A stretch of 63,805 nucleotides of DNA, filler included, from Octopus bimaculoides (Eukaryota), in NCBI RefSeq assembly GCF_001194135.2. It is 6 parts of 5 records of this genome, joined end to end, with 100 filler letters (N's around TTAATTAATTAA, not from the genome) between each part and the next. Parts side by side here need not be neighbours in the genome. Positions count along the whole stretch, not along the records: positions 22,451 to 50,484 come from NC_068986.1; 5 more parts are not named here. One strand, given 5' to 3'. The number at the start of each line of letters is the position of its first letter. Position 1 is the stretch's first letter. Positions 22,407 through 49,708 of the stretch are shown in pieces. A program made the translations under genes and the position numbers. The notes beneath the pieces are model-generated. The model was not told the origin of the DNA, did no database searches, and worked only from the letters and a program-made list of their open reading frames with translations.

Positions 22407-22729
22407 NNNNNNNNNNNNNNNNNNNNNNNNNNNNNNNNNNNNNNNNNNNNTATATATATATACTTATGTATATATATATGTGTATCGAAGTTTGGAAACA
22501 CTCGTCAGTCATACAGTACCCCCACAACTTGTATCACACCATGGTTCTTATCTATTTGATGAGTTAAACTTTATATCACGTTTGGTGAGTAATAACGTCC
22601 TTGCTAACCGGTTTCGAATGGGTCACTCGTTGCTTCACTACATTTACTAGACTGACGAGTGGTTGCGGAGCCAAATCACAGGGATTTTTTGTTCAAATGC
22701 ATGTTTATTATTCTTTTCTTTTCTACTCC

Positions 22730-22900
22730 AGGCACAAAGCCCGACATTTTGGGGGAGGGGGGGCAGTCGATTAGATCAACCCCAGTACGCAACTTGTACT
22801 TAATTTATCGACCCTGAAAGGATGAAAGGTAAAGTCGACCTCGGTGGAATTTGAACTCAGAACGTAAAGGCAGACGAAATACTGCTAAACATTTCGCCGC
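22730..22900 (-). mobile_element. family A SINE (minus copies also ~23895-24070, 37815-37955, 38730-38905, 52570-52715; plus copies ~25600-25790, 25905-26075)
   Basis: Reverse complement of the family A core: gaaaggatgaaagg(c/t)aaagtcgacctcgg(c/t)ggaatttgaactcagaacgta. Confidence 0.85.
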
Positions 22901-24516
22901 CTTTTTATTCAAAAGCATCTTTTTATTGGTCCGGTTCTATCACCGATGTTTTAAACTTCACTCCCGCACACACCGAGTATTCTGATTTACAAACCTAGGA
23001 AGACCACTATTCAATAAATAACTCAGTACATTTTAATATGTAGAGTCAATTTCTGTATAGAATTTTATTTGACATTAACTGTGTTATATAAAGTATGAAT
23101 TAATTCAATGAATAATATCAGTTCAATTTTGTCTTCTGTGAAACAACTTACCTATCGGTGGCTCAACACTGAAAAACGACTGTGGGAAAGATTTGACCTT
23201 TCAGCTTAGAAAACGACTGAGAACAACAAATGTATGAAAAAAAAAACCCCAAAAAAACCCAAAAAAACCATTGATTTAAAAAGAAAGGGAAGAAAAGAAA
23301 GAAAAATATCTAAGATTTTAAAGTTTTATCGAAAAAAATTAAAAATACAAAAACCTGCAAAATACAAAATTACTTCAACAAGGAAAGTATTTACTCTACA
23401 AGTGAGCACATGTGTTTCATTTCATATTTCGGAACCTCACCACGAACGGTTTACGCACACGAAGGACTTGCAAACAATTTTGAGGTACTGAGCTTTATTC
23501 ACAAACCAGTGGTCGCTACGAGGCTGTGGTAGCGGACTCTTGACCAAGTTTCTGAGCTATGGCATCGATTCTGGAGCTATGACTTGCTGAATTGAACCAT
23601 TGGTTCTCAACCTTTTGTAACTCAGCATCCTTTTTCACGAACGACCCCAGGTCATGTTCTGCAATAAATAAATAAATAAATAAATAAATAAAAATAAAAA
23701 TAATTTTTTTTTAAATAAATAAAAAGTAAGAGAATTAACGAAACAGAAGCTCATTGTGTGCAACGGTTTATTATTATCTGTATTTCTTATACTAGCGTCT
23801 GCCTTGATTTTTGATATTTGAACGCATTAGTATCTGGTCATGCTTATTTCTTTAATGGATATTTGTTAAGTGGGTGAAGGCCTACTTTATCCTTTCTACT
23901 CTAGGCACACGGCCAGAGATTTTGGGGAAGGGGAAGGTGTCGATTTTATCAGCTCCAGTACTTGATTGGTATTTATTTTATCAACTCAAAAAGGATGAAA
24001 GGCAAAATCGATCTGGGCGAAATTTGAACTCAGAACGTGAAGCCGAAAGAAATGCAGGTAAACGTTTAATCTAGTGTTCAACATTAATTAATGTATTTTG
24101 GGGAAAATTTGAGCGTTATTACAAGCCAATCGAGCCAGAGTGCAGAGGTGCCCTCGATGGGTCGAAAATGATTAGTTGTTTTCCGGTATAGATACTAAGG
24201 TTCAGGATTATATTGGTAGGTGGAAGAGGAAAAGGAGCTTGTGTGATATTCGTGTTTCTCTAAAAAGGTATGAGTACTATATGCATAACAAGAAATGATT
24301 TCATCTGGAAATGGAATTTGCACTGCGGATCCAGTGGCCTTAGCATATCAAATGCCTTTACTTTGTAGCAGAACGACGACGACCGAAACCACCATCACCA
24401 CCACTGTAGTCTTGAATATACAAAAAGACGGGATGGTTATGGTTAGAACGTCATTACTCGCACGTCTGCTCGGTCAGAGTTGACTTGAGCGTAAACAGCA
24501 CCAACATCATCATCAC

Positions 24517-24943: not shown

Positions 24944-27399
24944 ATACACACACATAAACACACACACACACATATATATAAATACATACATATATATATA
25001 TTAGCTGATGGCAAAGCTTTGTGGTAAGAAGGTTTCTTCCCAACCACATTGCTCCAGGCTTAGTCTCACTGCGTAGTACCTTAGGTAAAATTCTTCTATT
25101 AAAGTCCCTGGACGACCAAAGTCCTCTGAGTGGATTTGGCTGACAGAAAATGAAAGACTGTCGTGTATATATATATAATTCACGAGAAAATAATTCACTA
25201 GAAAAAATAATCATGAAAAAATAATTTGCGAAGGTATCATCGACTCTATTATTATCTAGTGTAACAATTCAAAAGTGATAATACCAGAATCAATAATATA
25301 TGTTCATATTTGTGTTTGTCCCACACTGCAACTTGACACCCAGTGTTGTATTGTTTACGTCCGCGTAACTTAGCGCTTCGGCAAAAGATATCGATAAAAT
25401 AAGTAGAAAGCTTTAAAAAACAAGTACTGGCGTTGATTCATTCGACTAATACACTTCAAGACAGTGCCCCAGCATGGCAGCAGTCCAATGACTGAAACAA
25501 GTGAAAGATAAGTCACAAGTATCTTGGACTGCATCCAGAGTAGGACCCTACGACTGATTGGCAAATAATCACCCACAGGTACATTCGATCCCTTAGTTAT
25601 TACTTTTGCGACGAATTGATGAAGCATTAAGGCGTCGGTCAAAAAACCTTACAGTATTTATTTCCGATTCTTTATGTTCTGAGTCCAACTTCGCTTTTCA
25701 TCCTCCCCAAATCAACATGAAACACCAGTCAGGCACTGGAGTCAATTCAATCGACTGTTCTCACTCCCTTAATTTCTGGTTTTTGAGCTGATGTAAGAAG
25801 TTTTTACCTTCAGATGCACCTACCCACTTCTTGTTGCATACATCCATGTCGCATTGTGGTTTGCGGGTCAGTGCTTTACAGACGGTTTAGAACTAAATTG
25901 GCCATGACACTCTGCGGAATTTCGTTCGTCTTTACGTTCTGGGTTCAAATTCCGCCGAGGTCGACCTTTGCCTTTCATTTTTTCGGAGTCTATGAAATAA
26001 GTACCAGTTGCTCACAAGAGATAAATATAATTGACTAACCTCTTTCCCCAACATTTCAGGCCTTGTGCCTATAGTAAGGAAATACTTGATTGAAGCTTAT
26101 AACTCGTTCACCAATTTAACATCCCTGCCTCTGGTTTACTGCTGCTTACACCACTGAACTTAATCACTCCATGGAACACACTCACAGTCAGGTGGAGTAA
26201 GCTATTGAGAAATAACTATCGTTTTATTTTGTGATACAAATCCTGCCATTCCCGTGTTCAGCCAGATATTGTTAAGTTTAATCATATATTGTTAACAACC
26301 TATCAGAAACACAAAGAACACTTTGAGGAATGCAGTCCAGGGCGTACTGTAACTGAAAATAAGATGAAATGGCCCTGAAAGGAATGTTTTCCTTCTTTCG
26401 AGCAAAAAATGAAGCCTTAGGTCAATGGTTTCCAACCTTTTCAATATTTTGCACCCTTAGGATACGTTTGATTAAATTTCACACCCTCTTCGAAAGTAAT
26501 ATCGCATAATGAAGATAAAAACATCAATTTTCTAATAACGTATTTATTATCCTTTTTTTAATTGAAATACATACAGTACTGCGAATGAATGCATTGAACT
26601 TAAACAATAAGTGCATTAGAATGCAAATGTAAATTGAGCAGTTGGAAAAAATAACTGTAAGCAGTAAAATCAATCACATGACATTTTTGTTCCTGCTTCT
26701 CATTCATAAATTTAATTAAAACGTGGAACTTTCTTATTGACTCGATCCACAGATATGCCTGTGGATTCAGGCGATTTCTAGATTTTGTCTTGATTGACAA
26801 AAGAGAACTGAATCCAGATTCACGTATGTCGTTGCAAATGAAATGAGGAAACAGTTCTTCGCCTTAATCCTTTATGGATTGAATCTCCATAAGAAGAATA
26901 AAGCTTTTGATGTAATTCGTAAAGTTATTTTTAAGAGTTAATTAATAATTTTATTCTGAAAAGTGATTTTAATAAATATGTATAAATGTTTCCTCATTTC
27001 AGCAAAGTATATATTTTCCCTCCTGAAATACCATCTCGCACTCCAGGCTGGGAGTTATGCTCTTGGCGGTCACTCAACCTCTCAGAAAAAGTAGATAAAT
27101 TACTTTCAAATCATACGATACAAAAGTGAAGGTTTAACTTCGACGCAGAAAATCTGTTTATCATTGCCTAAATAATAGAAACCATATTTGGTAATACATA
27201 CATACAATCAACAATAAAACCACCCTTGATATCAGCCTACATATTAAAGAAATAGTTCGTGTACTGTGCAAGTAAAGATACTTTCCTCTTGTCACAAAGC
27301 AAGTTACATAAGAAAAAAGATGGAATAGGGATAAGTTCTCCCTTTCGGTCAACCTTTGCCGTGTTCTACATGGGTAATTAATAAATCACACAAAACAAG

Positions 27400-29658: not shown

Positions 29659-29832
29659 CCAAGTGTTAACTGAGGTTATTATTTTGAAGCAAGTTTAAGA
29701 ATAACAAAAGAACATTTACTGAAGCTGAGGGGATTCAATACTCAGAATAGAATAAAATCGGTTATAAAATCTGTGTCGACTGGTTGAATAAGCCGTTAGG
29801 CAAAACTCTCATTCAATACAAATTTTATCATA

Positions 29833-31035
29833 AGGTTTTGTAGTCATTTTCGTACGTTCGTCATTCAATTTGATAATCGGGTCATTCAAAGTCGCGAAAA
29901 AATATCAGCGCCATGAGGTTAGTCATTCAAATTCGTTTTTCGATCCGGAGGCGTCAGAAGTGTGGGCTTATGCAAGAACACCTGTTATCTGATGCAAGAA
30001 GAGTGCAACTGTCTGAAATTCCTCATAACTCGCCGTTTCTTAATTGTACGGAAATGGCACATTCTGCCTTTAAGGCGGCTGTCAAGTGGGACCTCGCTCG
30101 AGCTGAGTTGCAGCAAAGGGTTGGCGACCGGGCAGCTGCAGAAGAAGCCAGCATGATCATGGAAGAACGGCGTGCACATGTCATACAACAGGTCGCAAGT
30201 CGTAACATCAACACTATCACTCCAGAAAATTGTGTTCATTGGTTTAGACACACCCAGACCTACCTCTCGAGATGCATCGACCGCCAGGAAATAGACGACT
30301 AAGTCCCCTCAAATGAACTCCTTATCAAGGCTGTAAATTAATAATTATCTGAGTGCACATAGCACCATTTCCNNNNNNNNNNNNNNNNNNNNNNNNNNNN
30401 NNNNNNNNNNNNNNNNNNNNNNNNNNNNNNNNNNNNNNNNNNNNNNNNNNNNNNNNNNNNNNNNNNNNNNNNNNNNNNNNNNNNNNNNNNNNNNNNNNNN
30501 NNNNNNNNNNNNNNNNNNNNNNNNNNNNNNNNNNNNNNNNNNNNNNNNNNNNNNNNNNNNNNNNNNNNNNNNNNNNNNNNNNNNNNNNNNNNNNNNNNNN
30601 NNNNATGATGTCTTTAACAATAAATACATGTACCTATGCAAAAATAAAAGAACACATAGAAAAGGCATGGGCACGATAAAGCGCTTAAAGCATAAACAAT
30701 GGATGAAAACACATGACTATGATAAAAATGATCATGAGATAAAACCAAAACAACTCTCGTGCTAATTTGATTGCTCGAAGCGTTAAATAGATTGCTCGGA
30801 AACGAACTTGAATGCTCGAAAAGACGCTTCCTCACATTCCAACTAATTCGAATGCTCTCGACGGGCATTTTAATGTGAATGATGACAATGGTAAATTCTT
30901 TGACCGAAGTGCGAAATTGAATGATCGAAAAACGAATTTGAATGACTAACTTCATGGCGCTGATATTTTTTCGCGACTTTAAATGGCCCGATTATCAAAT
31001 TGAATGACAAACGTACGAAAATAACTGTAAAAATT
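29833..31035 (+). mobile_element. IS630/Tc1-superfamily element with >100-bp TIRs and a transposase C-terminal remnant
   Basis: 29842-29945 is the near-perfect reverse complement of ~30922-31026. Internal PHNSPFLNCTEMAHSAFKAAVK...ITPENCVHWFRHTQTYLSRC. Interrupted by an N gap. Confidence 0.8.
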
Positions 31036-31056
31036 TATATTATTTATTTATATCTA

Positions 31057-33249: not shown

Positions 33250-34068
33250 AATATGTATTATACATGTACACATATATACATATGTACATACACAGACACA
33301 CACACATATATTTAGACAGATAGCTTGATAAAATGCCGGACAGCTATATAGATGTCATGCTGAAAAAACACAATAAAAAAAAAAACTCCAAGCAAATAAA
33401 ACAAACAATCAAGGCACGAACTGTCAGACAGATACATCCGTATTGCAACAATCGGGATGAAGACGATAATTCCACACAGGTAACTTGCAAACTTTACATC
33501 AAAGTTAAGAGCACTGCTGCATTTGACTACTCAGTGTATATACACACATACATACATACATATATTATATACATGTATATTATATATATATATGTGTGTG
33601 TGTGTGAGTGTGTGTGTGTATATATAAATATATATATATATATATATANNNNNNNNNNNNNNNNNNNNNNNNNNNNNNNNNNNNNNNNNNNNNNNNNNNN
33701 NNNNNNNNNNNNNNNNNNNNNNNNNNNNNNNNNNNNNNNNNNNNNNNNNNNNNNNNNNNNNNNNNNNNNNNNNNNNNNNNNNNNNNNNNNNNNNNNNNNN
33801 NNNNNNNNNNNNNNNNNNNNNNNNNNNNNNNNNNNNNNNNNNNNNNNNNNNNNNNNNNAAAACGAAAAAACATCATGAACATGTCGTTGCATCATATCCA
33901 TTTCCTGCCCCTCCCCAACCCCCTTTATTTGTTTGCACCCACACCGTTTGTACATGTCCTCTCTGCACTGTATTCTTCGCCATGCATGTATAAACTCCTG
34001 CCCTGTATTTTACTGCTTCTCCACCCTTCTTCCTTATTACAAGGGACGGCTGACGTTCGAAATAGCTC

Positions 34069-34160
<92 letters not shown>

Positions 34161-34680
34161 ACACTCATATAGACACACGCATATATATATATACTCTTAG
34201 ACGCACATATGCACTCGTATACAAATGCATATATTCATACCAATTTTTTGAAGTTTATTTCTTCCGAAAAAAATTTATTTTATTTTATTTGGATGTAGAA
34301 GAAGGGGAAGGAAAGACACTGTCTTTGTCTCTCTCACACACACTCATACACACACATACACTCATCGTCTCTTTCTCTTTCTCTCACGCATATATATATA
34401 TATATATACACACATACACAGAACAAGGAAAGAAAAAAAAACGATTAGCGCCTGAGGAGTCAAACGCTGATAGCTTGGCGAGCACGCGGCACGATACAAC
34501 ACGTTCTGTGCTACAGGAGTTCCAGGATGAAGGAATAGAGGAATGAATAGATAGATAAATATATCATTAGGTAACTAAACAACAAATATAGTAACAGCAG
34601 CAGTAACAACAACAGCAATTTCTGATAACTTTGATAATTACAATGACGATGACGATGATAACAATTACAATGAAAATTTT

Positions 34681-34741
<61 letters not shown>

Positions 34742-34748
34742 CACTACA

Positions 34749-34783
<35 letters not shown>

Positions 34784-34804
34784 TAATAATGATAATAATA
34801 AATG

Positions 34805-36490
34805 TTTTCTTTATTAACCACTAGGGTCTTACAAAAAGATCGAGGATGGTACGGGACGGTACAATATGATGCAATATGGGATTGCATAATAGCGCGTAAA
34901 CAGTAAAATAAAAGAAACAAAGGAGCAACAAAATTCAAACAAGAAATCTCCCCAAAAGTGGGGAGACGTCCGAGTGTAGCTCGTAGAAACCTCTCAAAAC
35001 CACAATCCCACTGACCACTAGGCAAGTTCCATCTCACTTTCTTCTTCTTCTCTCAGTCTATAGGCACATGTTCAGAACAGACCTGTTCACTCGGACCATC
35101 CTTGTCACTCTCATCCATCTTTCATCAAATCTGTTGAAAGGCAGCGTTTCCCTCTCCACTCTCACTTTCCTTTTCAAGTGGAACTTGAAAAAGTTGACGA
35201 GGGCTTGGCCAAAGAAGACGGTATCTGTCCTTAAACCTTTCAGTTTGTCCATTTTTGCTAAGGCTTCTAGACAGATAAAGACTGTATGTGTTTCTCGGCC
35301 AAAGGAAGGCAGCGGACCGATCTTCACAATCGACTTAGCTGATGGCCGAATCCATTCCACTCGCGAGAGCAGTTGTTTGACAACTCCACGAGTCAGCAAT
35401 ACTGCGGGTACAGGACGAGTGCGTGCAAAACAGTTTCGGGAATCGGTAATGTTCCCACCACACACCACCACCACCACTACCACCACCTCTGGTAACAATG
35501 ACAAGCCAGAGATTTCTGGAAATTATTGATGAACGTTGGCCCGAAATTCTTCTGGAACACACCAGCCAGTTGACTTTCGTCAACACCAAGAGTTTCTTTG
35601 AGAACGTTGTTGTTCTTGCCCGTCATTAACCATCTGTAAAACGCCAAAGTAGAATTTTCACAGAACATATTACCCGATTGTGTGCACCTTACAATATTCT
35701 CGGTACCAGGCAGACTGTCGCGGTCTACGCTTGATTCAGGACAACAAATCTGTCAAAGAGATGGGCCAAGGAAAACGTGTCCGACAAATAACCACCACAC
35801 TTGTTAAATGTTAAGGATATGTTGGAGATGCTGTAGCTTTCATACATCTCTGCGCCTCTCTAGCCACAGTACGTACAATCCTCCATTCAGTGAGTGTTGA
35901 CAGCAAATACAGCGTCTGACCAGTGGAATGCGTCCCTTTCACAAAAAAAGTGGAGGTGCAGATGATTTGGCGCAAGGCACATCCGTCAGACGTAATAGAT
36001 GACGGATGAGATGAAGGAGTTCATCATCTCTGCCCGATGTTTCAGGGATAGACTCTACTCAGCCCAATTCTGAGTGAGATTGGTAACCCGGCTCGTCACC
36101 TTATCTTAATTCTCGTTCAAACTTCGAGCAATTCAACCGGTCTATCCGTCCAGGGTCTTACAATGCAATTAGACGGCATAAACCTGCCTCTCCGAGCTGC
36201 GGCCAGTGATATTGGTAGGATGTCTTTATGTTGTAGTTGTGTTGGCGATCCTTGTTCCCTGGGTGGTGATGTTGCTGTCTGCAGCTGGTATCGTTGAGAG
36301 TGTTTTTGTTGTTCCTTTTCGTGCCGCTTCTCTTGGTCCTACTGCTGTTCATGCTGCTGTTGCTGCTTCTGATTTTGTTGCTGATGTTGCTGTTGTGGTA
36401 AAGGCATCGGCTAAAAAGGGGTCCTTCCTACTCTGCTTCTTCTTTTTCTTTGGCAGTAAACAGAAAGATCTTACATGTTATGTGTCTCCA
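34805..36490 (-). mobile_element. L1/Tx1-clade LINE, copy 1 (post-RT ORF2, zinc-knuckle region, 3' UTR; low-complexity ORF1-like piece at 36200-36490)
   Basis: VTSRVTNLTQNWAE*SLSLKHRAE, KGRIPLVRRCICCQHSLNGGL, FQKSLACHCY, ETVLHALV and ALVNFFKFHLKRKVRVERE..F.ERW. AATAAA then (TTA)n near 34810. Confidence 0.8.
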
Positions 36491-36657
36491 AATATATAAC
36501 CTTCTGAAAAGCCGTAAGCCATTCGGAAGGTTGATTACATCAAGTATAACCTCTATACTTTCTTGACCTGTTTAAATTAATAATGCCATCTCTGTGTCTG
36601 ATCAATTTTTCTTTCTCAGCCTGTAAACTGGCAGACTATTTTTATTTTCCATGTCGT

Positions 36658-36776
36658 ATCGGACAAGAATCGATGTTTTCAACGTGATTTGGCCGTAAAC
36701 TTGTTTACTACACCTAGGTTTCCCAAGCAGTCACCCATCTAAGTACTAAGTAGATTCGACTTACTTAACTCAGCTG
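36658..36776 (-). pseudogene. 5S rRNA-derived sequence, circularly permuted (nt ~45-119, then AA, then nt 1-43)
   Basis: Minus strand: cagctgagttaagtaagtcgaatctacttagtacttagatgggtgactgcttgggaaacctaggtgtagtaaac-aa-gtttacggccaaatcacgttgaaaacatcgattcttgtccgat. The 5' part matches a recalled metazoan 5S consensus at 38/43, and box C agtactt-gatgggtgac is recognisable. Confidence 0.85.
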
Positions 36777-36870
36777 GCAAAAATGAGTGATCCTGCGACA
36801 GACTGATGTCCCGTCCATGCGGGGAACATATGCGCCAGGGAAACCGAGAAAACCGGCCTTATGCTTCGGG
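36767..36870 (+). mobile_element. headless SINE body fragment abutting the 5S copy in the opposite orientation
   Basis: actcagctggcaaaaatgagt is shared with family D and is followed by cctgcgacagactgatgtcccgtcca. Confidence 0.55.
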
Positions 36871-37959
36871 AAAAGTTTTTATCCATTTTATGTCGTATAA
36901 TACGGACACCGTCAGCAAGAAGAAAAGATATCTACTTCTTGTGTTATCTGACTCTCCTGTATTTTTACCCCCCCCCCTCCGAGATATGTTGAAATCGAGA
37001 CCATTTCATCTCTCTTTATGGCTCTCATATTTTCCTTTTCTTCGGTTTGTGACGTCACCTCAACTTATAACAAAACGTCTTCCTCGAGAGACACAAGTTT
37101 TTATGCATCAGATTGACAAAGCTTCGATTTAAGTGTGATGCATTTGTATATGATTGTTTTCCTTTGGCTTTCCTCTTGAATCCATTGCAGTGTGTTCAGC
37201 TAAATTACTGTACCATTTTTGGTGAGATGAGTTTTTGCTTTCTTAGTTCTTATAAAGATACTACTTCTAGTTTTCTGTATACATTTACGAATCCGCTTCT
37301 ACCGTTTTTATTCTCCGAGAATGTGTGGTGGTGGTGGAAGTCGTATACATTCCAATGCTCTCTTTGTCTCGCTTGCCGCAGTTGTTGCTGTTGTTGCTGT
37401 TATTTGTCGTGATGTGAAGTATGGTGGAGCAGCAGTGTTGCTTTTGCATCTCTTTTCATTTGGGCTGCCTTTGTTGTCGTTGTTGTTGTTACCATTGCTA
37501 TTGCTATTCATACGGTCTCTGTTCACTGCGGCTGCAGTGGAAAATTAATATTATATTAACTGTTGGAACAGCTAACTGCCAACTCGATTTGATAAGCCAT
37601 ATCTTTTTAAATATCTAACTTTATTTTTTAAAACGTTCAAAATTCGCCCTGAAGGGATGAACATTTTACAAAGCCAATCAACCTCAGAGGAGGTTTAATA
37701 TGAAAATGGTACAATAGAGAATCAAAAATACTTTGTTCAAAATTGGATAACAAATTACGAGCTCTAAATCAACGTCTTTCACTTGCAGAGATTATAAAAA
37801 TATAAATAGTAATTTTGGTTTCAAATTTTGGCACAGAGCCTGCTGTTTGTAAGGAGATGGGGAAGTTGATAACATCAACTCAAGTACTTGACTGGTACAT
37901 ACTTTATCGAGCTCGAAAGGCAAAGTCAACTTCGGTGGAATTTGAATTCAGAACGTAGT

Positions 37960-38725
37960 TCATGCAACAAGTTCATCCTCGTCGACGCCTGTTGTTTCCC
38001 GAGAACGTCAACGTCATCGCTCTTACCCATCACTACATTTCTATTCATTGCTACAGTAGAAATCCGCTGACCGCATTTCCCAACTGGTAGAGGGCAGTGA
38101 GTACCTGACGACATTCCCGATGACAGGCGCCTAATATTGGTCTTTTTTTTTTTACCCAGAATTGCAACTCAACCAAAGAGATGAGCTACGGAAAGGAATG
38201 TCATACAAACGGAAACCACACCGGCTCAACGCCCAGGAAAATCTGTAAGTGGCACAACTGCAGCGCGTGCCTGCGCATGAGCAGTCATGGCATGGCAAGC
38301 CCGCCATCCAGAAGGCATTAGCAGCCATGGCATGGCAAGCCTGCAATCCAGAAGGCATTAGCAGCCATGGCATGGCAAGCCCGCCATCCAGAAGGCGCTG
38401 GCAACAGATAGACCGTCTCACTAGAGGAACGTGTCCTTTCCACAGCGGAAAAGTAAACGCTCCAGTCTGGCCAAAACGAGAACTGGGGCAAGGTACAACA
38501 GTCAGGCGGTAAGTTACTAAGGAGACGATGTAAGCATTCACCACCCTTTCAGGGATAATTTCCTCTCGTCCCATTTCTGAATTAAACTGGTCACCCTGCT
38601 TGTAACCTCGCCCCACTAATTGTCCACCTGGAGGTTCAGATAGAACTAGACGGCATGCAATTTCACCGGTCCGTCTGTCTACCGACCTACTATTCTAGTC
38701 GTTGGCATAGACTTGTCTCTCAAGA
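37960..38725 (-). mobile_element. L1/Tx1-clade LINE, copy 2 (ORF2 post-RT fragment)
   Basis: TDGPVKL...WGEVTSRVTSLIQKWDERKLSLK, AYIVSLVTYRLTVVPCP, LWKGHVPLVRRSICCQRLLDGGLAMPWLLM and GVDEDEL. Cut by a family A SINE at ~37955. Confidence 0.8.
38281..38396. repeat. 40-bp tandem repeat, ~2.9 copies
   Basis: Unit gcagccatggcatggcaagcccgccatccagaaggcatta starts at 38281, 38321 and 38361. Confidence 0.95.
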
Positions 38726-38989
38726 TTTCTATTATAGGCAAAAGGTCTGAAATTTTGGGGAAAGGGCTAGTCGAAGACATCGACCTCAGTGCTCAACTGG
38801 TACTTATTTTATCGACACCGAAAGGATGAAAGGCAAAGCCGATTTCGGCGGAATTTGAACTCAAAACGTAAAGGCAGACGAAATGCCGCTAAGCATTTTG
38901 TCCGTCTTTACGTTCCGTCGTAACAGAAGCTTAATCCAGGCACGAGGTCGGCAATGTTTCGAGTGGCTGATACTAGAGGNNNNNNNNNN

Positions 38990-39043
<54 letters not shown>

Positions 39044-43195: not shown

Positions 43196-44464
43196 TCAGG
43201 TTGAGTAAATAGTAAACAACGTTTTGAACCACGAAGAATTCGTACCGGATTTTTGCAGAGTTTTGAATTTTTAAACATTTTTTTGCAACAGTCTGATAAT
43301 ACAGACATAAAATTGCCCAAATGCATAAATAAATTAACATTGATATTTTTTTAACGTTGTTACAAATATCTGGAATAGAACTACCAAAGTGCGATATTCG
43401 AGCAATTTTGTTATTCAACTTCAAAAAAGGACGTAAAGCAGCTGAAACTGCCCGTGATATCAACGAAACGTTTGGTGAGGAAATGACCAGTGAGTGGTCA
43501 GCTCGAAAATGGTTTAAACGATTTCACAGTGGAGACCTGAGCCTTGAAGATCGTGAGCGTGGTGGACACACATCTGTCATCGATGACGGTCAATCAAAGA
43601 CCGTCATTGAGAAAGATTCACGTAAGACCACTCGAAAACTGGCAAAAATACTTCAAGTTAGCCAGAAAACTGCCTGCAACTATTTGCATGCGATCGTAAA
43701 ATCAAAATAGCTCGACAAATGGGTACCACACAATTTGGATGAAAATCAGAAAATGTGCAGATATGAAATTTGTTCGTCGCTTCTTCTCTGTAACCAGACC
43801 GATCCATTTCTTGACCGTATTGTAACTTGCGATGAAATGTGGATTCTGTACAATAATAAAAAAACGTTCTTCGCAGTGGTTGAACCAAAATGAAGCACCA
43901 AAAACCTTCCCTAAACCCGAGCTCTTCAAAAAGAAGGTTATGGTGATTGTTTGGTGGTGTACTGCTGGACCCATCTACTATAACTTCTTAAAACCCGGAA
44001 AAACCATTACTGCAGAAACATATTGCCATGAAATTGCCGAAATGAACGAAAAACTGGTACTCATCCTCCATCCCAGATTGATCAAAAGAAGAGGGCCAAT
44101 CATTCTTCATGACAATTCTCAACCACTAATGAAGTTGAGGTAACTTGGCTACGAAGTTCTTCCCCATCCAGCTTATTCTTCAGACCTTTCTCCACCCGAC
44201 TACAACTTTTTCAAGCACCTCGATGGTTTCCTGCGAGAGAAAGAGTTCAAAAATCAAACCGATGCTGAAAGTGCGTTCAAAGAGTTCAATAGTTCCAGAA
44301 CTCCAGATTTTTTATGTTACCGGAAGAAACAAACTTGTAACTCGTTTGCAAAAATGTGTTGACTGTAATGGTACTTACTTTGGTGAATAAAATTTCCGCA
44401 TTGTTGGAATATATTGTGATGAATTTCATGTTTCAAAACGTTGCTTACTTTTGACCCAGCCTGA
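43196..44464 (+). mobile_element. near-full-length mariner (DD34D) with a disrupted transposase
   Basis: TIRs tcaggttgagtaaatagtaaacaacgttttgaa / ttcaaaacgttgcttacttttgacccagcctga, with TA on both sides. Motifs WVPHNL, TCDE.WILY, LHDNSQP and HPAYSSDLSPPDYNFF across ORF pieces 43357-43710, 43832-44143 and 44145-44390. Confidence 0.95.
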
Positions 44465-48806: not shown

Positions 48807-49708
48807 GTGGGTGGAAAGCAACTAGGTATCAGAAATTGCTGATAGATTATTTAATATCACTGAAGTCATGACGAAAACATTTTTTAAACAGACAACACTA
48901 ATAGGGACTTCTTATTTACTTATTGCCTTGTTTCTTATATCTTGGTTTCCAGATGGCTGGTCGCTTGATTGTTCAGGAGCGAGCTAAGATAACAACACGC
49001 TATGAAGTATGGAATTCCATTGTTTTGATTCAGAGATGGTGGCGTGCATGGAATGTCAAGCATACAATGCTACATTCAGAGACAATAAAAAGTTGTCATG
49101 CAAAGCTGATGACCACGGGCTCTGTGAACGATGCAAGAAGAAGTGGCTTTCCAACTACATCCCAATTAGGGGAGAACGTAGCAACAGTGCAACAAATGTT
49201 TAATCGCATCCCGCAAAAATCAACACGTCAAGCAGCTCGTGAAAGTGGACTAACAAGACACACAATACGTAGGGTGTTGCATAAAGGATTGAATTTTCGT
49301 TCGCGGAAACCCCATTACGTACTGGAACTAAAACCCGATGACTGTGAGTGTAGAAGTCCAGAACTCCAAGAAGTCCAGACCTCACTCCATGTGATTTTTA
49401 CCTGTGGGGTTACACAAAAGAGGTGTAGAAGACAAAACGTTGTATACCGGAGGACTTGGAGACACGGATTCAGGAGGTTCTCAATGATATCCCAGACGAC
49501 GTCCTTCAGAAGGTTGTTCATCCCATCCCTGGCCGTTTGAGGAAACTGGTTGACGCTACCGGTGCTAACGTTGAAATATGAAGCTTCACTTTCATTTTCC
49601 CATATGATAAAGATGTATCGTTTGTTTCAATACATTTGTAAAAGGAATGTGGACTTCATTACAAATTGTTAATGCCTACCTAATGCCTACCAATTTTTAA
49701 TGCCTACC
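48803..49708 (+). mobile_element. maT/DD37D-like element with an internal deletion
   Basis: N-terminal DUF4817-like MAGRLIVQERAKI...STRQAARESGL...KPDDCECR joined to RSPDLTPCDFYLWGYTKE...RLRKLVDATGANVEI*. Left end cagggtgggtggaaagcaact. Confidence 0.85.

What the first reader, a model, noticed from the sequence alone, without database searches (positions are those of the whole stretch)
36658..36776. Circularly permuted, unit-length 5S rRNA copy
Seen: on the minus strand the 3' part of 5S (nt ~45/50-119) comes first, then AA, then nt 1-43. The total is 119 nt, so it is essentially one monomer with its ends joined. The joined ends are complementary (gtaaac / gtttac), as helix I requires, so both halves derive from the same 5S variant. 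Known: animal 5S rDNA repeats have a non-transcribed spacer much longer than 2 nt, and ordinary 5S retrocopies start at or are truncated toward nt 1. Inference: reverse transcription of an end-ligated circular 5S RNA, or an RT jump from the 5' end of one 5S molecule to the 3' end of another. It would be a genomic fossil of circular 5S rRNA.
Basis: partly seen in the sequence, partly recalled or inferred. Interest (0 to 1): 0.75.

Follow-up and report, generated by a model that had tools for sequence, protein, structure and literature searches.

The report
Circularly permuted 5S rRNA pseudogene
A dead, single copy of 5S ribosomal RNA sits in this (probably octopus) scaffold with its back half placed before its front half. 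The two natural RNA ends are joined by just two bases, so it was most likely copied from RNA by a reverse transcriptase that crossed from one end of 5S to the other. It is a neat curiosity, not proof of circular 5S RNA.

Summary
On the minus strand, 36776-36703 matches 5S nt ~44-119, 36702-36701 is AA, and 36700-36656 matches 5S nt 1-43/45. A small animal 5S HMM finds only these two hits in the 28-kb piece (E 7.5e-11 and 1.4e-6). After re-permutation they form one colinear full-length hit of 73 bits. Rfam finds nothing at its gathering score.

The copy keeps 33 of 39 canonical base pairs. That is more than the same substitutions placed at random would keep (P ~0.005). So it came from an intact, AT-rich 5S variant and has decayed only moderately.

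The flanks hold no further significant 5S, no tandem array, no target-site duplication and no second copy. Because the junction joins the two RNA termini, an RNA-templated origin is the best reading. Reverse transcription probably started in the loop C / A-rich region, a breakpoint known from mammalian 5S retrocopies. It then ran to nt 1 and continued from the 3' end.

A covalently circular template is possible but not required, because helix I already holds the two ends together. I could not test genome-wide copy number, raw reads or orthologous loci. Verdict: a new variant of a known kind, of modest interest.

The parts
36703..36776 (-). 3' part of 5S rRNA (about nt 44/49 to 119). It carries the internal control region (box A, IE, box C) and the 3' strand of helix I, ending in GTAAAC.
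   Evidence: nhmmer model 49-115, 36.5 bits, E 7.5e-11. Rfam RF00001 aligns its positions ~60-120 here. MAFFT alignment to four references.
36701..36702 (-). AA dinucleotide joining the 5S 3' end to 5S nt 1. No T-run terminator and no spacer.
   Evidence: Direct reading. Junction pattern unique in the window, 0 expected by chance.
36656..36700 (-). 5' part of 5S rRNA. Nt 1-43 are secure; the last two bases (AC) are ambiguous.
   Evidence: nhmmer model 1-43(51), 22.6 bits, E 1.4e-6. Alignment.
36637..36655 (-). Immediate downstream flank GACATGG + AAAATAAAAATA. It may be the A-rich priming or target site, and is weakly alignable to 5S nt 44-51.
   Evidence: nhmmer extends into it at low posterior probability, 0.4-0.5. 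Anchored alignment is not significant. Its role is inferred by analogy with tailless retropseudogenes.
36777..36786 (-). Upstream linker TCATTTTTGC with a T5 run (36779-36783). This is a Pol III terminator-like run lying between any upstream start site and the 5S internal promoter.
   Evidence: Direct reading. The functional consequence is inferred.
36787..36826 (-). Unresolved weak resemblance to 5S nt ~12-46. If real, the insert would be about 1.3 units long.
   Evidence: Right-anchored alignment to Drosophila 5S nt 1-46 is reached by 0.07% of random 40-mers, but by 7.9% when the copy's own 5' part is the reference. Unanchored searches are not significant.

Best explanation
This is a non-functional, RNA-derived copy of the host's 5S rRNA, made in one reverse-transcription event.

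Synthesis began inside the RNA, in the single-stranded loop C / A-rich stretch around nt 45-55. It ran to the 5' end (nt 1) and added two extra bases, read as AA on the sense strand. It then carried on from the 3' end of 5S. That 3' end most simply belongs to the same linear molecule, whose two ends are held side by side by helix I; it could also belong to a second 5S molecule. Synthesis stopped when it came back to the loop C region, which gives one unit length.

The cDNA was then fixed in the genome and has since picked up a few mutations.

Shown: the permuted anatomy; the junction at both RNA termini; the structural integrity of the source variant; and the absence of a surrounding array.

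Inferred: the reverse transcriptase, the priming site, the jump and the integration route.
For: - The junction joins the last helix-I base to nt 1 with only AA between them. There is no terminator T-run or spacer. DNA breakpoints would have to hit both RNA termini by coincidence.
- The two halves add up to one colinear 5S: 73.2 bits when re-permuted, against 36.5 + 22.6 as found.
- The copy keeps 33 of 39 canonical pairs. The same substitutions placed at random keep 27 +/- 2 (P 0.004-0.006). Only 6 of 69 positions invariant across the four animal references are changed. So it derives from a real, folded 5S RNA variant.
- The break at nt ~43-49 matches known hotspots. Human tailless 5S retropseudogenes are truncated in loops through internal priming at A-rich stretches, with A-rich target complementarity (PMC5322556). 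5S segments in LINE-1 chimeras run from nt 1 to a truncation at nt 46 or 90 (bioRxiv 10.1101/2025.02.02.635956).
- An A-rich block, AAAATAAAAATA, lies 7 nt beyond the 5' part.
- There is no further significant 5S in +/-300 nt and no tandem repeat.
- Dong et al. name reverse transcription across the close ends of a structured linear RNA as a route to non-colinear pseudogenes.
Against: - No target-site duplication was found, either at the borders or within 400 nt.
- There is no clear poly(A) tail.
- This is one copy only, with no second example to show recurrence.
- The tailless and template-jump precedents are mammalian LINE-1 cases, whereas this genome is probably a cephalopod's.
- Unit length needs a reason to stop at loop C if two separate molecules were used.
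- The AA could equally be part of the RNA 3' end.
- A weak hint of extra 5S-like sequence upstream would change the geometry if it is real.
Confidence: 0.45

Rival explanations
1. The template was a covalently closed circular 5S RNA, with its 3' end (carrying AA) ligated to nt 1. Reverse transcriptase started in loop C, went once around the circle and stopped at its own starting point.
For: Unit length and the exact end-to-end junction follow naturally from this model. circRNA-derived pseudogenes with non-colinear junctions and poor A tails exist in mammals. Circular 5S reads were reported in archaea, although they were not validated by RT-PCR.
Against: No paper in the searched library describes circular 5S rRNA in eukaryotes. 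From my own knowledge, eukaryotic 5S keeps the 5' phosphates of its transcription start, which makes it a poor ligase substrate. The observed anatomy is produced equally well by a jump across helix I on a linear RNA. A circle gives no special reason for AA rather than the usual 3' U residues.
Confidence: 0.17
2. The origin is at the DNA level. The segment is a fragment of a spacerless head-to-tail 5S dimer, or of a 5S-derived satellite, that exists elsewhere in the genome. It was moved or left here by duplication and deletion.
For: This could not be excluded, because the genome itself could not be searched. There is a weak, unresolved 5S-like stretch upstream (36787-36826). Further chance-level 5S-like words lie downstream, for example GTTTACTGCCAAA at about 36462-36450.
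Against: TRF finds no tandem array here. The flanks show no significant 5S and there is no other copy in 28 kb. Known animal 5S arrays have spacers with terminators. Trimming a dimer to exactly one unit needs two more coincident deletions. Any such array would itself need an RNA-end junction at its origin.
Confidence: 0.15
3. It is an assembly artefact of a draft scaffold, with mis-joined reads from 5S repeats.
For: The scaffold is a gap-rich draft with 11 N runs in 28 kb. The junction forms an inverted repeat (GTAAAC/GTTTAC), a context in which assemblers can err.
Against: The locus lies in a gap-free stretch between N runs at 33858 and 38980, inside unique sequence. A fold-back error would give the reverse complement of the 3' part, not the genuine 5' part. 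The copy is diverged from a canonical 5S, so it is not a collapsed active array.
Confidence: 0.05
4. It is a functional permuted 5S gene, whose transcript is used as it is or re-joined by way of a circle, as with permuted tRNA genes or brown-algal mitochondrial 5S.
For: The internal promoter region is well kept, and 33 of 39 pairs survive. Permuted 5S molecules exist in stramenopile mitochondria.
Against: It is a single copy in intergenic, repeat-rich DNA. A T5 terminator-like run lies between the expected start site and the promoter. Six pairs are broken, and the fold is no better than shuffled sequences, z = -0.29. There is no terminator after the 5' part.
Confidence: 0.02

Closest known systems
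circRNA-derived pseudogenes (Dong et al. 2016, Cell Res; PMC4897178)
   Same: A genomic DNA copy whose parts are in non-colinear order, joined exactly where the RNA's 3' end meets its 5' end. The A tail is weak or absent.
   Different: Those derive from back-spliced Pol II exon circles whose parent circRNA is documented, and often occur in several copies. Here the parent would be a Pol III 5S rRNA with no documented circular form, and there is only one copy.
Tailless 5S rRNA retropseudogenes (Noll et al. 2015; PMC5322556) and 5S/LINE-1 chimeric insertions (bioRxiv 10.1101/2025.02.02.635956)
   Same: A 5S segment that starts at nt 1 and is cut off in a loop (hotspot at nt ~46). There is no oligo(A) tail, and the target is A-rich next to the truncation.
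   Different: Those end at nt 1, or abut LINE-1 sequence, and carry target-site duplications. Here nt 1 is preceded by the rest of 5S (nt ~45-119), and no duplication is visible. The known cases are also mammalian.
Chimeric retrogenes made by reverse transcriptase template switching (Buzdin and colleagues; recalled from memory, and cited within)
   Same: Two RNA-derived parts in the same orientation, fused at an RNA terminus in one insertion event.
   Different: The usual partners are a small RNA plus a LINE-1, Alu or mRNA 3' part with poly(A). Here both partners are 5S, and together they make exactly one unit.
Permuted mitochondrial 5S rRNA of brown algae (Valach et al. 2014; PMC4267664) and permuted tRNA genes of Cyanidioschyzon
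   Same: The gene order of RNA domains is permuted, and helix I is closed into a hairpin.
   Different: Those are functional, conserved, expressed organelle or nuclear genes, with the new ends at the alpha/gamma junction. This is a lone decaying nuclear copy with its ends in the helix III / loop C region.
5S-derived mobile elements: SINE3, Cassandra, Ajax (Kojima 2024; PMC10886601)
   Same: 5S-like sequence dispersed outside the 5S arrays, with the internal promoter conserved.
   Different: Those are multi-copy families with a colinear 5S head or a promoter-only fragment, plus a LINE tail or LTR context. Here there is a complete 5S in permuted order, no tail, no LTRs, and a single copy in the piece.
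Circular 5S rRNA reads in Archaea (Danan et al. 2012; PMC3326292)
   Same: RNA-level joining of the 5S ends has been proposed.
   Different: Those are archaeal RNA-seq evidence only, not validated by RT-PCR, and leave no genomic copy.

Membership tests
5S rRNA gene (Rfam RF00001) | Colinear full-length match at or above the gathering score (38 bits) | tested here: not met
   No match at gathering score. Best match is 22.3 bits, E 0.051.
5S rRNA gene (Rfam RF00001) | Sequence homology to 5S over the whole molecule | tested here: met
   Two hits cover model positions 1-43 and 49-115. After re-permutation there is one hit, model 2-115, 73.2 bits.
5S rRNA gene (Rfam RF00001) | Canonical five-helix fold | tested here: inconclusive
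   33 of 39 consensus pairs are kept in the re-permuted order. The free fold is no better than shuffled sequences, z = -0.29.
5S rRNA gene (Rfam RF00001) | Pol III terminator (T-run) after the 3' end, and membership of a tandem array with spacers | tested here: not met
   AA followed by nt 1 comes after GTAAAC. There is no tandem repeat and no other 5S in 28 kb.
circRNA-derived pseudogene | Non-colinear junction joining the RNA's 3' end to its 5' end | tested here: met
circRNA-derived pseudogene | A documented circular parent RNA | not testable with these tools
   No RNA data for the species. No paper in the library contains the phrase 'circular 5S rRNA'.
Tailless retropseudogene (internal-priming TPRT) | 3' truncation in a single-stranded region, with A-rich target complementarity | tested here: inconclusive
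   The 5' part ends at nt 43-51, in the loop C / helix III region. AAAATAAAAATA follows 7 nt later. The anchored alignment of the flank to the 5S continuation is not significant.
Tailless retropseudogene (internal-priming TPRT) | Flanking target-site duplications of 8-35 nt | tested here: not met
   No flank match beyond chance.
Tailless retropseudogene (internal-priming TPRT) | The element begins at nt 1 of the RNA and abuts unrelated DNA | tested here: not met
   Nt 1 is preceded by AA and 5S nt ~45-119.
5S-derived SINE / TRIM (SINE3, Cassandra, Ajax) | Multi-copy family with a colinear 5S head plus a LINE-derived tail or LTRs | tested here: not met
   Single copy in the piece and in permuted order. 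The only nearby direct repeat (35603-36192 / 38010-38721, 60% identity) does not abut the 5S. Genome-wide copy number could not be tested.
5S-derived satellite / spacerless array | Several head-to-tail units at the locus or elsewhere in the genome | tested here: inconclusive
   Not present at this locus. The rest of the genome was not searchable. A metagenome scan for such junctions gave only chance matches.

The most novel reading that the evidence does not exclude
Animal cells (here probably an octopus germ line) make covalently end-joined, circular 5S rRNA. One such circle was reverse-transcribed once around and integrated, which would make this locus the first genomic fossil of a circular Pol III ribosomal RNA in a eukaryote.
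Probability: 0.15. Interest if true: 0.6.

Novelty: new variant of a known kind. Interest (0 to 1): 0.35.

Why it matters
If the RNA-templated reading is right, the locus records a reverse transcriptase crossing from the 5' end to the 3' end of a small structured RNA in vivo. That is an unusual product class, lying between tailless retropseudogenes, template-switch chimeras and circRNA-derived pseudogenes. I found no report of it for 5S rRNA in the searched literature.

It suggests a cheap genome-wide screen: look for permuted junctions of 5S, U6, 7SL, Y RNA or tRNA. Such a screen could measure how often end-to-end jumps or RNA circles feed the germ line.

It also shows a practical weakness of covariance-model annotation, which misses permuted copies: Rfam found nothing at its gathering score.

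On its own, a single decaying copy has no evident function and cannot tell a circle from a jump.

Tried and rejected
- **Rfam cmscan.** At gathering score it found nothing. I used nhmmer instead.
- **Longer array.** TRF, the repeat finder, local alignments of +/-300 nt against the copy's own monomer and the Drosophila monomer, and unit-versus-flank alignments all stayed at chance level.
- **Target-site duplication.** 40- and 60-nt flanks with shuffles and a genomic control, and a 400-nt upstream scan, gave nothing beyond chance.
- **Other copies in the piece.** None found.
- **5S-targeting element or LTR context.** The flanking 60%-identical repeat does not reach the 5S, and the sequences next to the 5S are not homologous to each other. 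Rejected.
- **Coding content nearby.** Ten start-to-stop ORFs from across the piece were scanned against Pfam. The four nearest the 5S (35058-38616) gave no hit; the only hits were transposase-type domains (mariner and a weak Tc3 HTH) far from the locus. The stop-to-stop frames of 34400-39000 were listed but not scanned.
- **Metagenome scan** for spacerless head-to-tail 5S junctions. There were 26 matches, about the number I roughly estimated by hand for chance; none contains 5S by nhmmer, and the five I read look like GC-rich coding sequence.
- **Fetching the same or an orthologous locus.** Four exact-protein look-ups of window ORFs failed. A homologue search with the ORF adjacent to the 5S found nothing.
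- **Organism.** It is only indirectly indicated as an octopod.
- **Functional permuted gene.** Rejected on the T5 run, the broken pairs and the single-copy context.

Full report
**Context.** The piece (22451-50484) is a draft animal nuclear scaffold.
- It has 11 runs of N, mostly next to CA/TA microsatellites.
- It holds a mariner remnant (HTH_48 and Transposase_1 domains, 43357-44143) and a Tc1-like ORF.
- It contains no tRNA and no Rfam family at gathering score.
- The only database homologue of a young transposon ORF (29913-30302) is an Octopus vulgaris protein. An O. bimaculoides protein also appears among the hits of another transposase ORF.
- The source is therefore probably an octopod cephalopod. 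This is an indication, not a proof.

**Observation.** Read on the minus strand, the sequence runs as follows.
- 36776-36703: CAGCTGAGTTAAGTAAGTCGAATCTACTTAGTACTTAGATGGGTGACTGCTTGGGAAACCTAGGTGTAGTAAAC
- 36702-36701: AA
- 36700-36656: GTTTACGGCCAAATCACGTTGAAAACATCGATTCTTGTCCGATAC

Both are on the minus strand. Model 49-115 matches 36771-36706 (E 7.5e-11), and model 1-43(51) matches 36700-36646 (E 1.4e-6).

Rfam's covariance model reaches only 22.3 bits (gathering score 38). It does so by aligning the true 3' part and forcing unrelated upstream sequence into the 5' half. After re-permutation the sequence aligns to the 118-nt references with one 1-nt gap and scores 73.2 bits as a single hit covering model 2-115.

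The uncertainty is about 5 nt, because model positions 44-48 can be assigned to either half.

**State of the copy.** It keeps 33 of 39 consensus base pairs, including 8 of 9 in helix I across the joined ends.
- Most of its 31-39 differences from the reference species lie in paired columns, and many are double changes that keep the pair.
- The same substitutions placed at random keep only 27 +/- 2 pairs (P 0.004-0.006).
- Only 6 of 69 positions that are invariant in all four reference animals are changed.

The AT-richness is thus largely a property of the source gene, a structurally sound 5S variant. The copy is a moderately decayed pseudogene. Its free fold is no better than shuffled sequences (z = -0.29).

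A T5 run (36779-36783) lies between the place where Pol III would start, about 50 nt upstream of box A, and the internal promoter. From this I infer that the copy is not productively transcribed.

**Surroundings.**
- There is no tandem repeat at the locus.
- The 300 nt on either side show no significant similarity to 5S or to the unit itself.
- There is no second copy in the piece.
- No target-site duplication stands out from shuffles or genomic controls.
- An A-rich block (AAAATAAAAATA, 36648-36637) lies 7 nt beyond the 5' part.
- One loose end remains. The 40 nt upstream of the linker TCATTTTTGC resemble Drosophila 5S nt ~12-46 when the alignment is anchored. Only 0.07% of random 40-mers score as high. 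Against the copy's own 5' part the figure is 7.9%, and the anchor was chosen after looking at the data. I leave this unresolved.
- An old direct repeat (35603-36192 and 38010-38721, 60% identity) brackets the region but does not abut the 5S. The sequences next to the 5S are not related to each other. An LTR or a 5S-specific-element context is therefore not supported.

**Mechanism.** The key fact is that the junction coincides with both ends of the RNA, with two bases and no terminator or spacer between them. DNA-level breaks would have to hit both termini by chance. Trimming a dimer to one unit would then need two more precise deletions. An RNA-templated origin is the economical reading.

The position of the break fits known behaviour of 5S in retroposition.
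- Human tailless 5S retropseudogenes start at nt 1 and end in loops. This is attributed to internal priming at A-rich stretches, with A-rich target complementarity (PMC5322556).
- 5S segments in LINE-1 chimeras run from nt 1 to a truncation at nt 46 or 90 (bioRxiv 10.1101/2025.02.02.635956).

I therefore propose the following sequence of events: priming near nt 45-55, synthesis to nt 1, addition of two bases, continuation from the 3' end of 5S, and a stop back at loop C.

Whether the template was covalently circular, the same linear molecule bridged by helix I, or two molecules cannot be decided from one locus. Dong et al. explicitly note that reverse transcription across the close ends of a structured linear RNA mimics a circle-derived pseudogene. 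Unit length favours a same-molecule event, whether circle or bridged ends, over two molecules.

The AA has three possible sources: non-templated addition by the enzyme, 3' adenylation of the RNA (both recalled from my own knowledge of the literature), or part of the gene.

I found no paper describing circular 5S rRNA in eukaryotes. Archaeal circular 5S reads exist but were not validated.

**What could not be done.** No eukaryotic genome collection was searchable by DNA. Genome-wide copy number of the junction, the species' real 5S arrays, the raw reads and orthologous loci therefore remain untested.
- A scan of the metagenome contigs for spacerless 5S head-to-tail junctions gave 26 matches, about the number I roughly estimated by hand for chance. 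None contains 5S by nhmmer.
- Exact-protein look-ups of window ORFs and a homologue search with the ORF next to the 5S found nothing.

**Verdict.** The feature is real and correctly described, and it is most likely a one-off RNA-derived permuted 5S pseudogene. It is a new variant of known kinds (tailless or template-switch retrocopies, and circRNA-type pseudogenes). It is of modest interest by itself, and it is not evidence that specifically supports circular 5S RNA.

Noticed in passing
window 22714-22894, 23887-24067, 25919-26076 (-), 38726-38909, 37830-37957 (partial): A SINE-like repeat of about 180 nt is present five times in 28 kb, at 72-80% pairwise identity. Its consensus contains ...GAAAGGATGAAAGGCAAAGTCGACCTCGGCGGAATTTGAACTCAGAACGTAAAG... 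From memory it resembles abundant octopus SINEs, with the tRNA-like end on the opposite strand. ARAGORN finds no tRNA.
   Followed up: partly
window 29830-31038: A probable young DNA transposon. Its 116-nt terminal inverted repeats (29830-29945 and 31038-30923) are 92% identical. It has an internal ORF at 29913-30302, whose only database homologue is an Octopus vulgaris hypothetical protein (65% identity over 43% of the query). An N gap interrupts the element.
   Followed up: partly
window 43357-44143: A frameshifted mariner (Mos1-type) transposase remnant, with HTH_48 (E 7.5e-18) and Transposase_1 (E 2.2e-24) domains on the + strand.
   Followed up: no
window 48923-49540: A Tc1/IS630-like transposase N-terminal ORF. 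Homologues at 50-70% identity occur in many animal and metagenome sources, including Blattella and Octopus bimaculoides.
   Followed up: no
window 35603-36192 and 38010-38721: An old direct repeat of about 600-700 nt, 59-60% identical (E 1e-17 and 4e-8), with no Pfam hit. It brackets the 5S locus at distances of about 470 and 1230 nt. It is probably two copies of an ancient non-coding repeat family.
   Followed up: partly
window 36787-36826 (-): A weak 5S nt 12-46-like stretch lies just upstream of the linker TCATTTTTGC. It is significant only against the Drosophila reference and only with a post-hoc anchor. If real, the insert would be longer than one unit.
   Followed up: partly
window 29392-50200 (11 N runs): Most assembly gaps are bordered by TA or CA microsatellites. 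Simple repeats therefore appear to be what broke the assembly. The 5S locus lies in a gap-free 5.1-kb stretch (33859-38979).
   Followed up: no
window 36342-36396 and 37366-37508: Imperfect GTT/GCT trinucleotide-type repeats (reading as CAA/CAG-rich on the minus strand) lie on both sides of the locus. Their significance is unknown.
   Followed up: no
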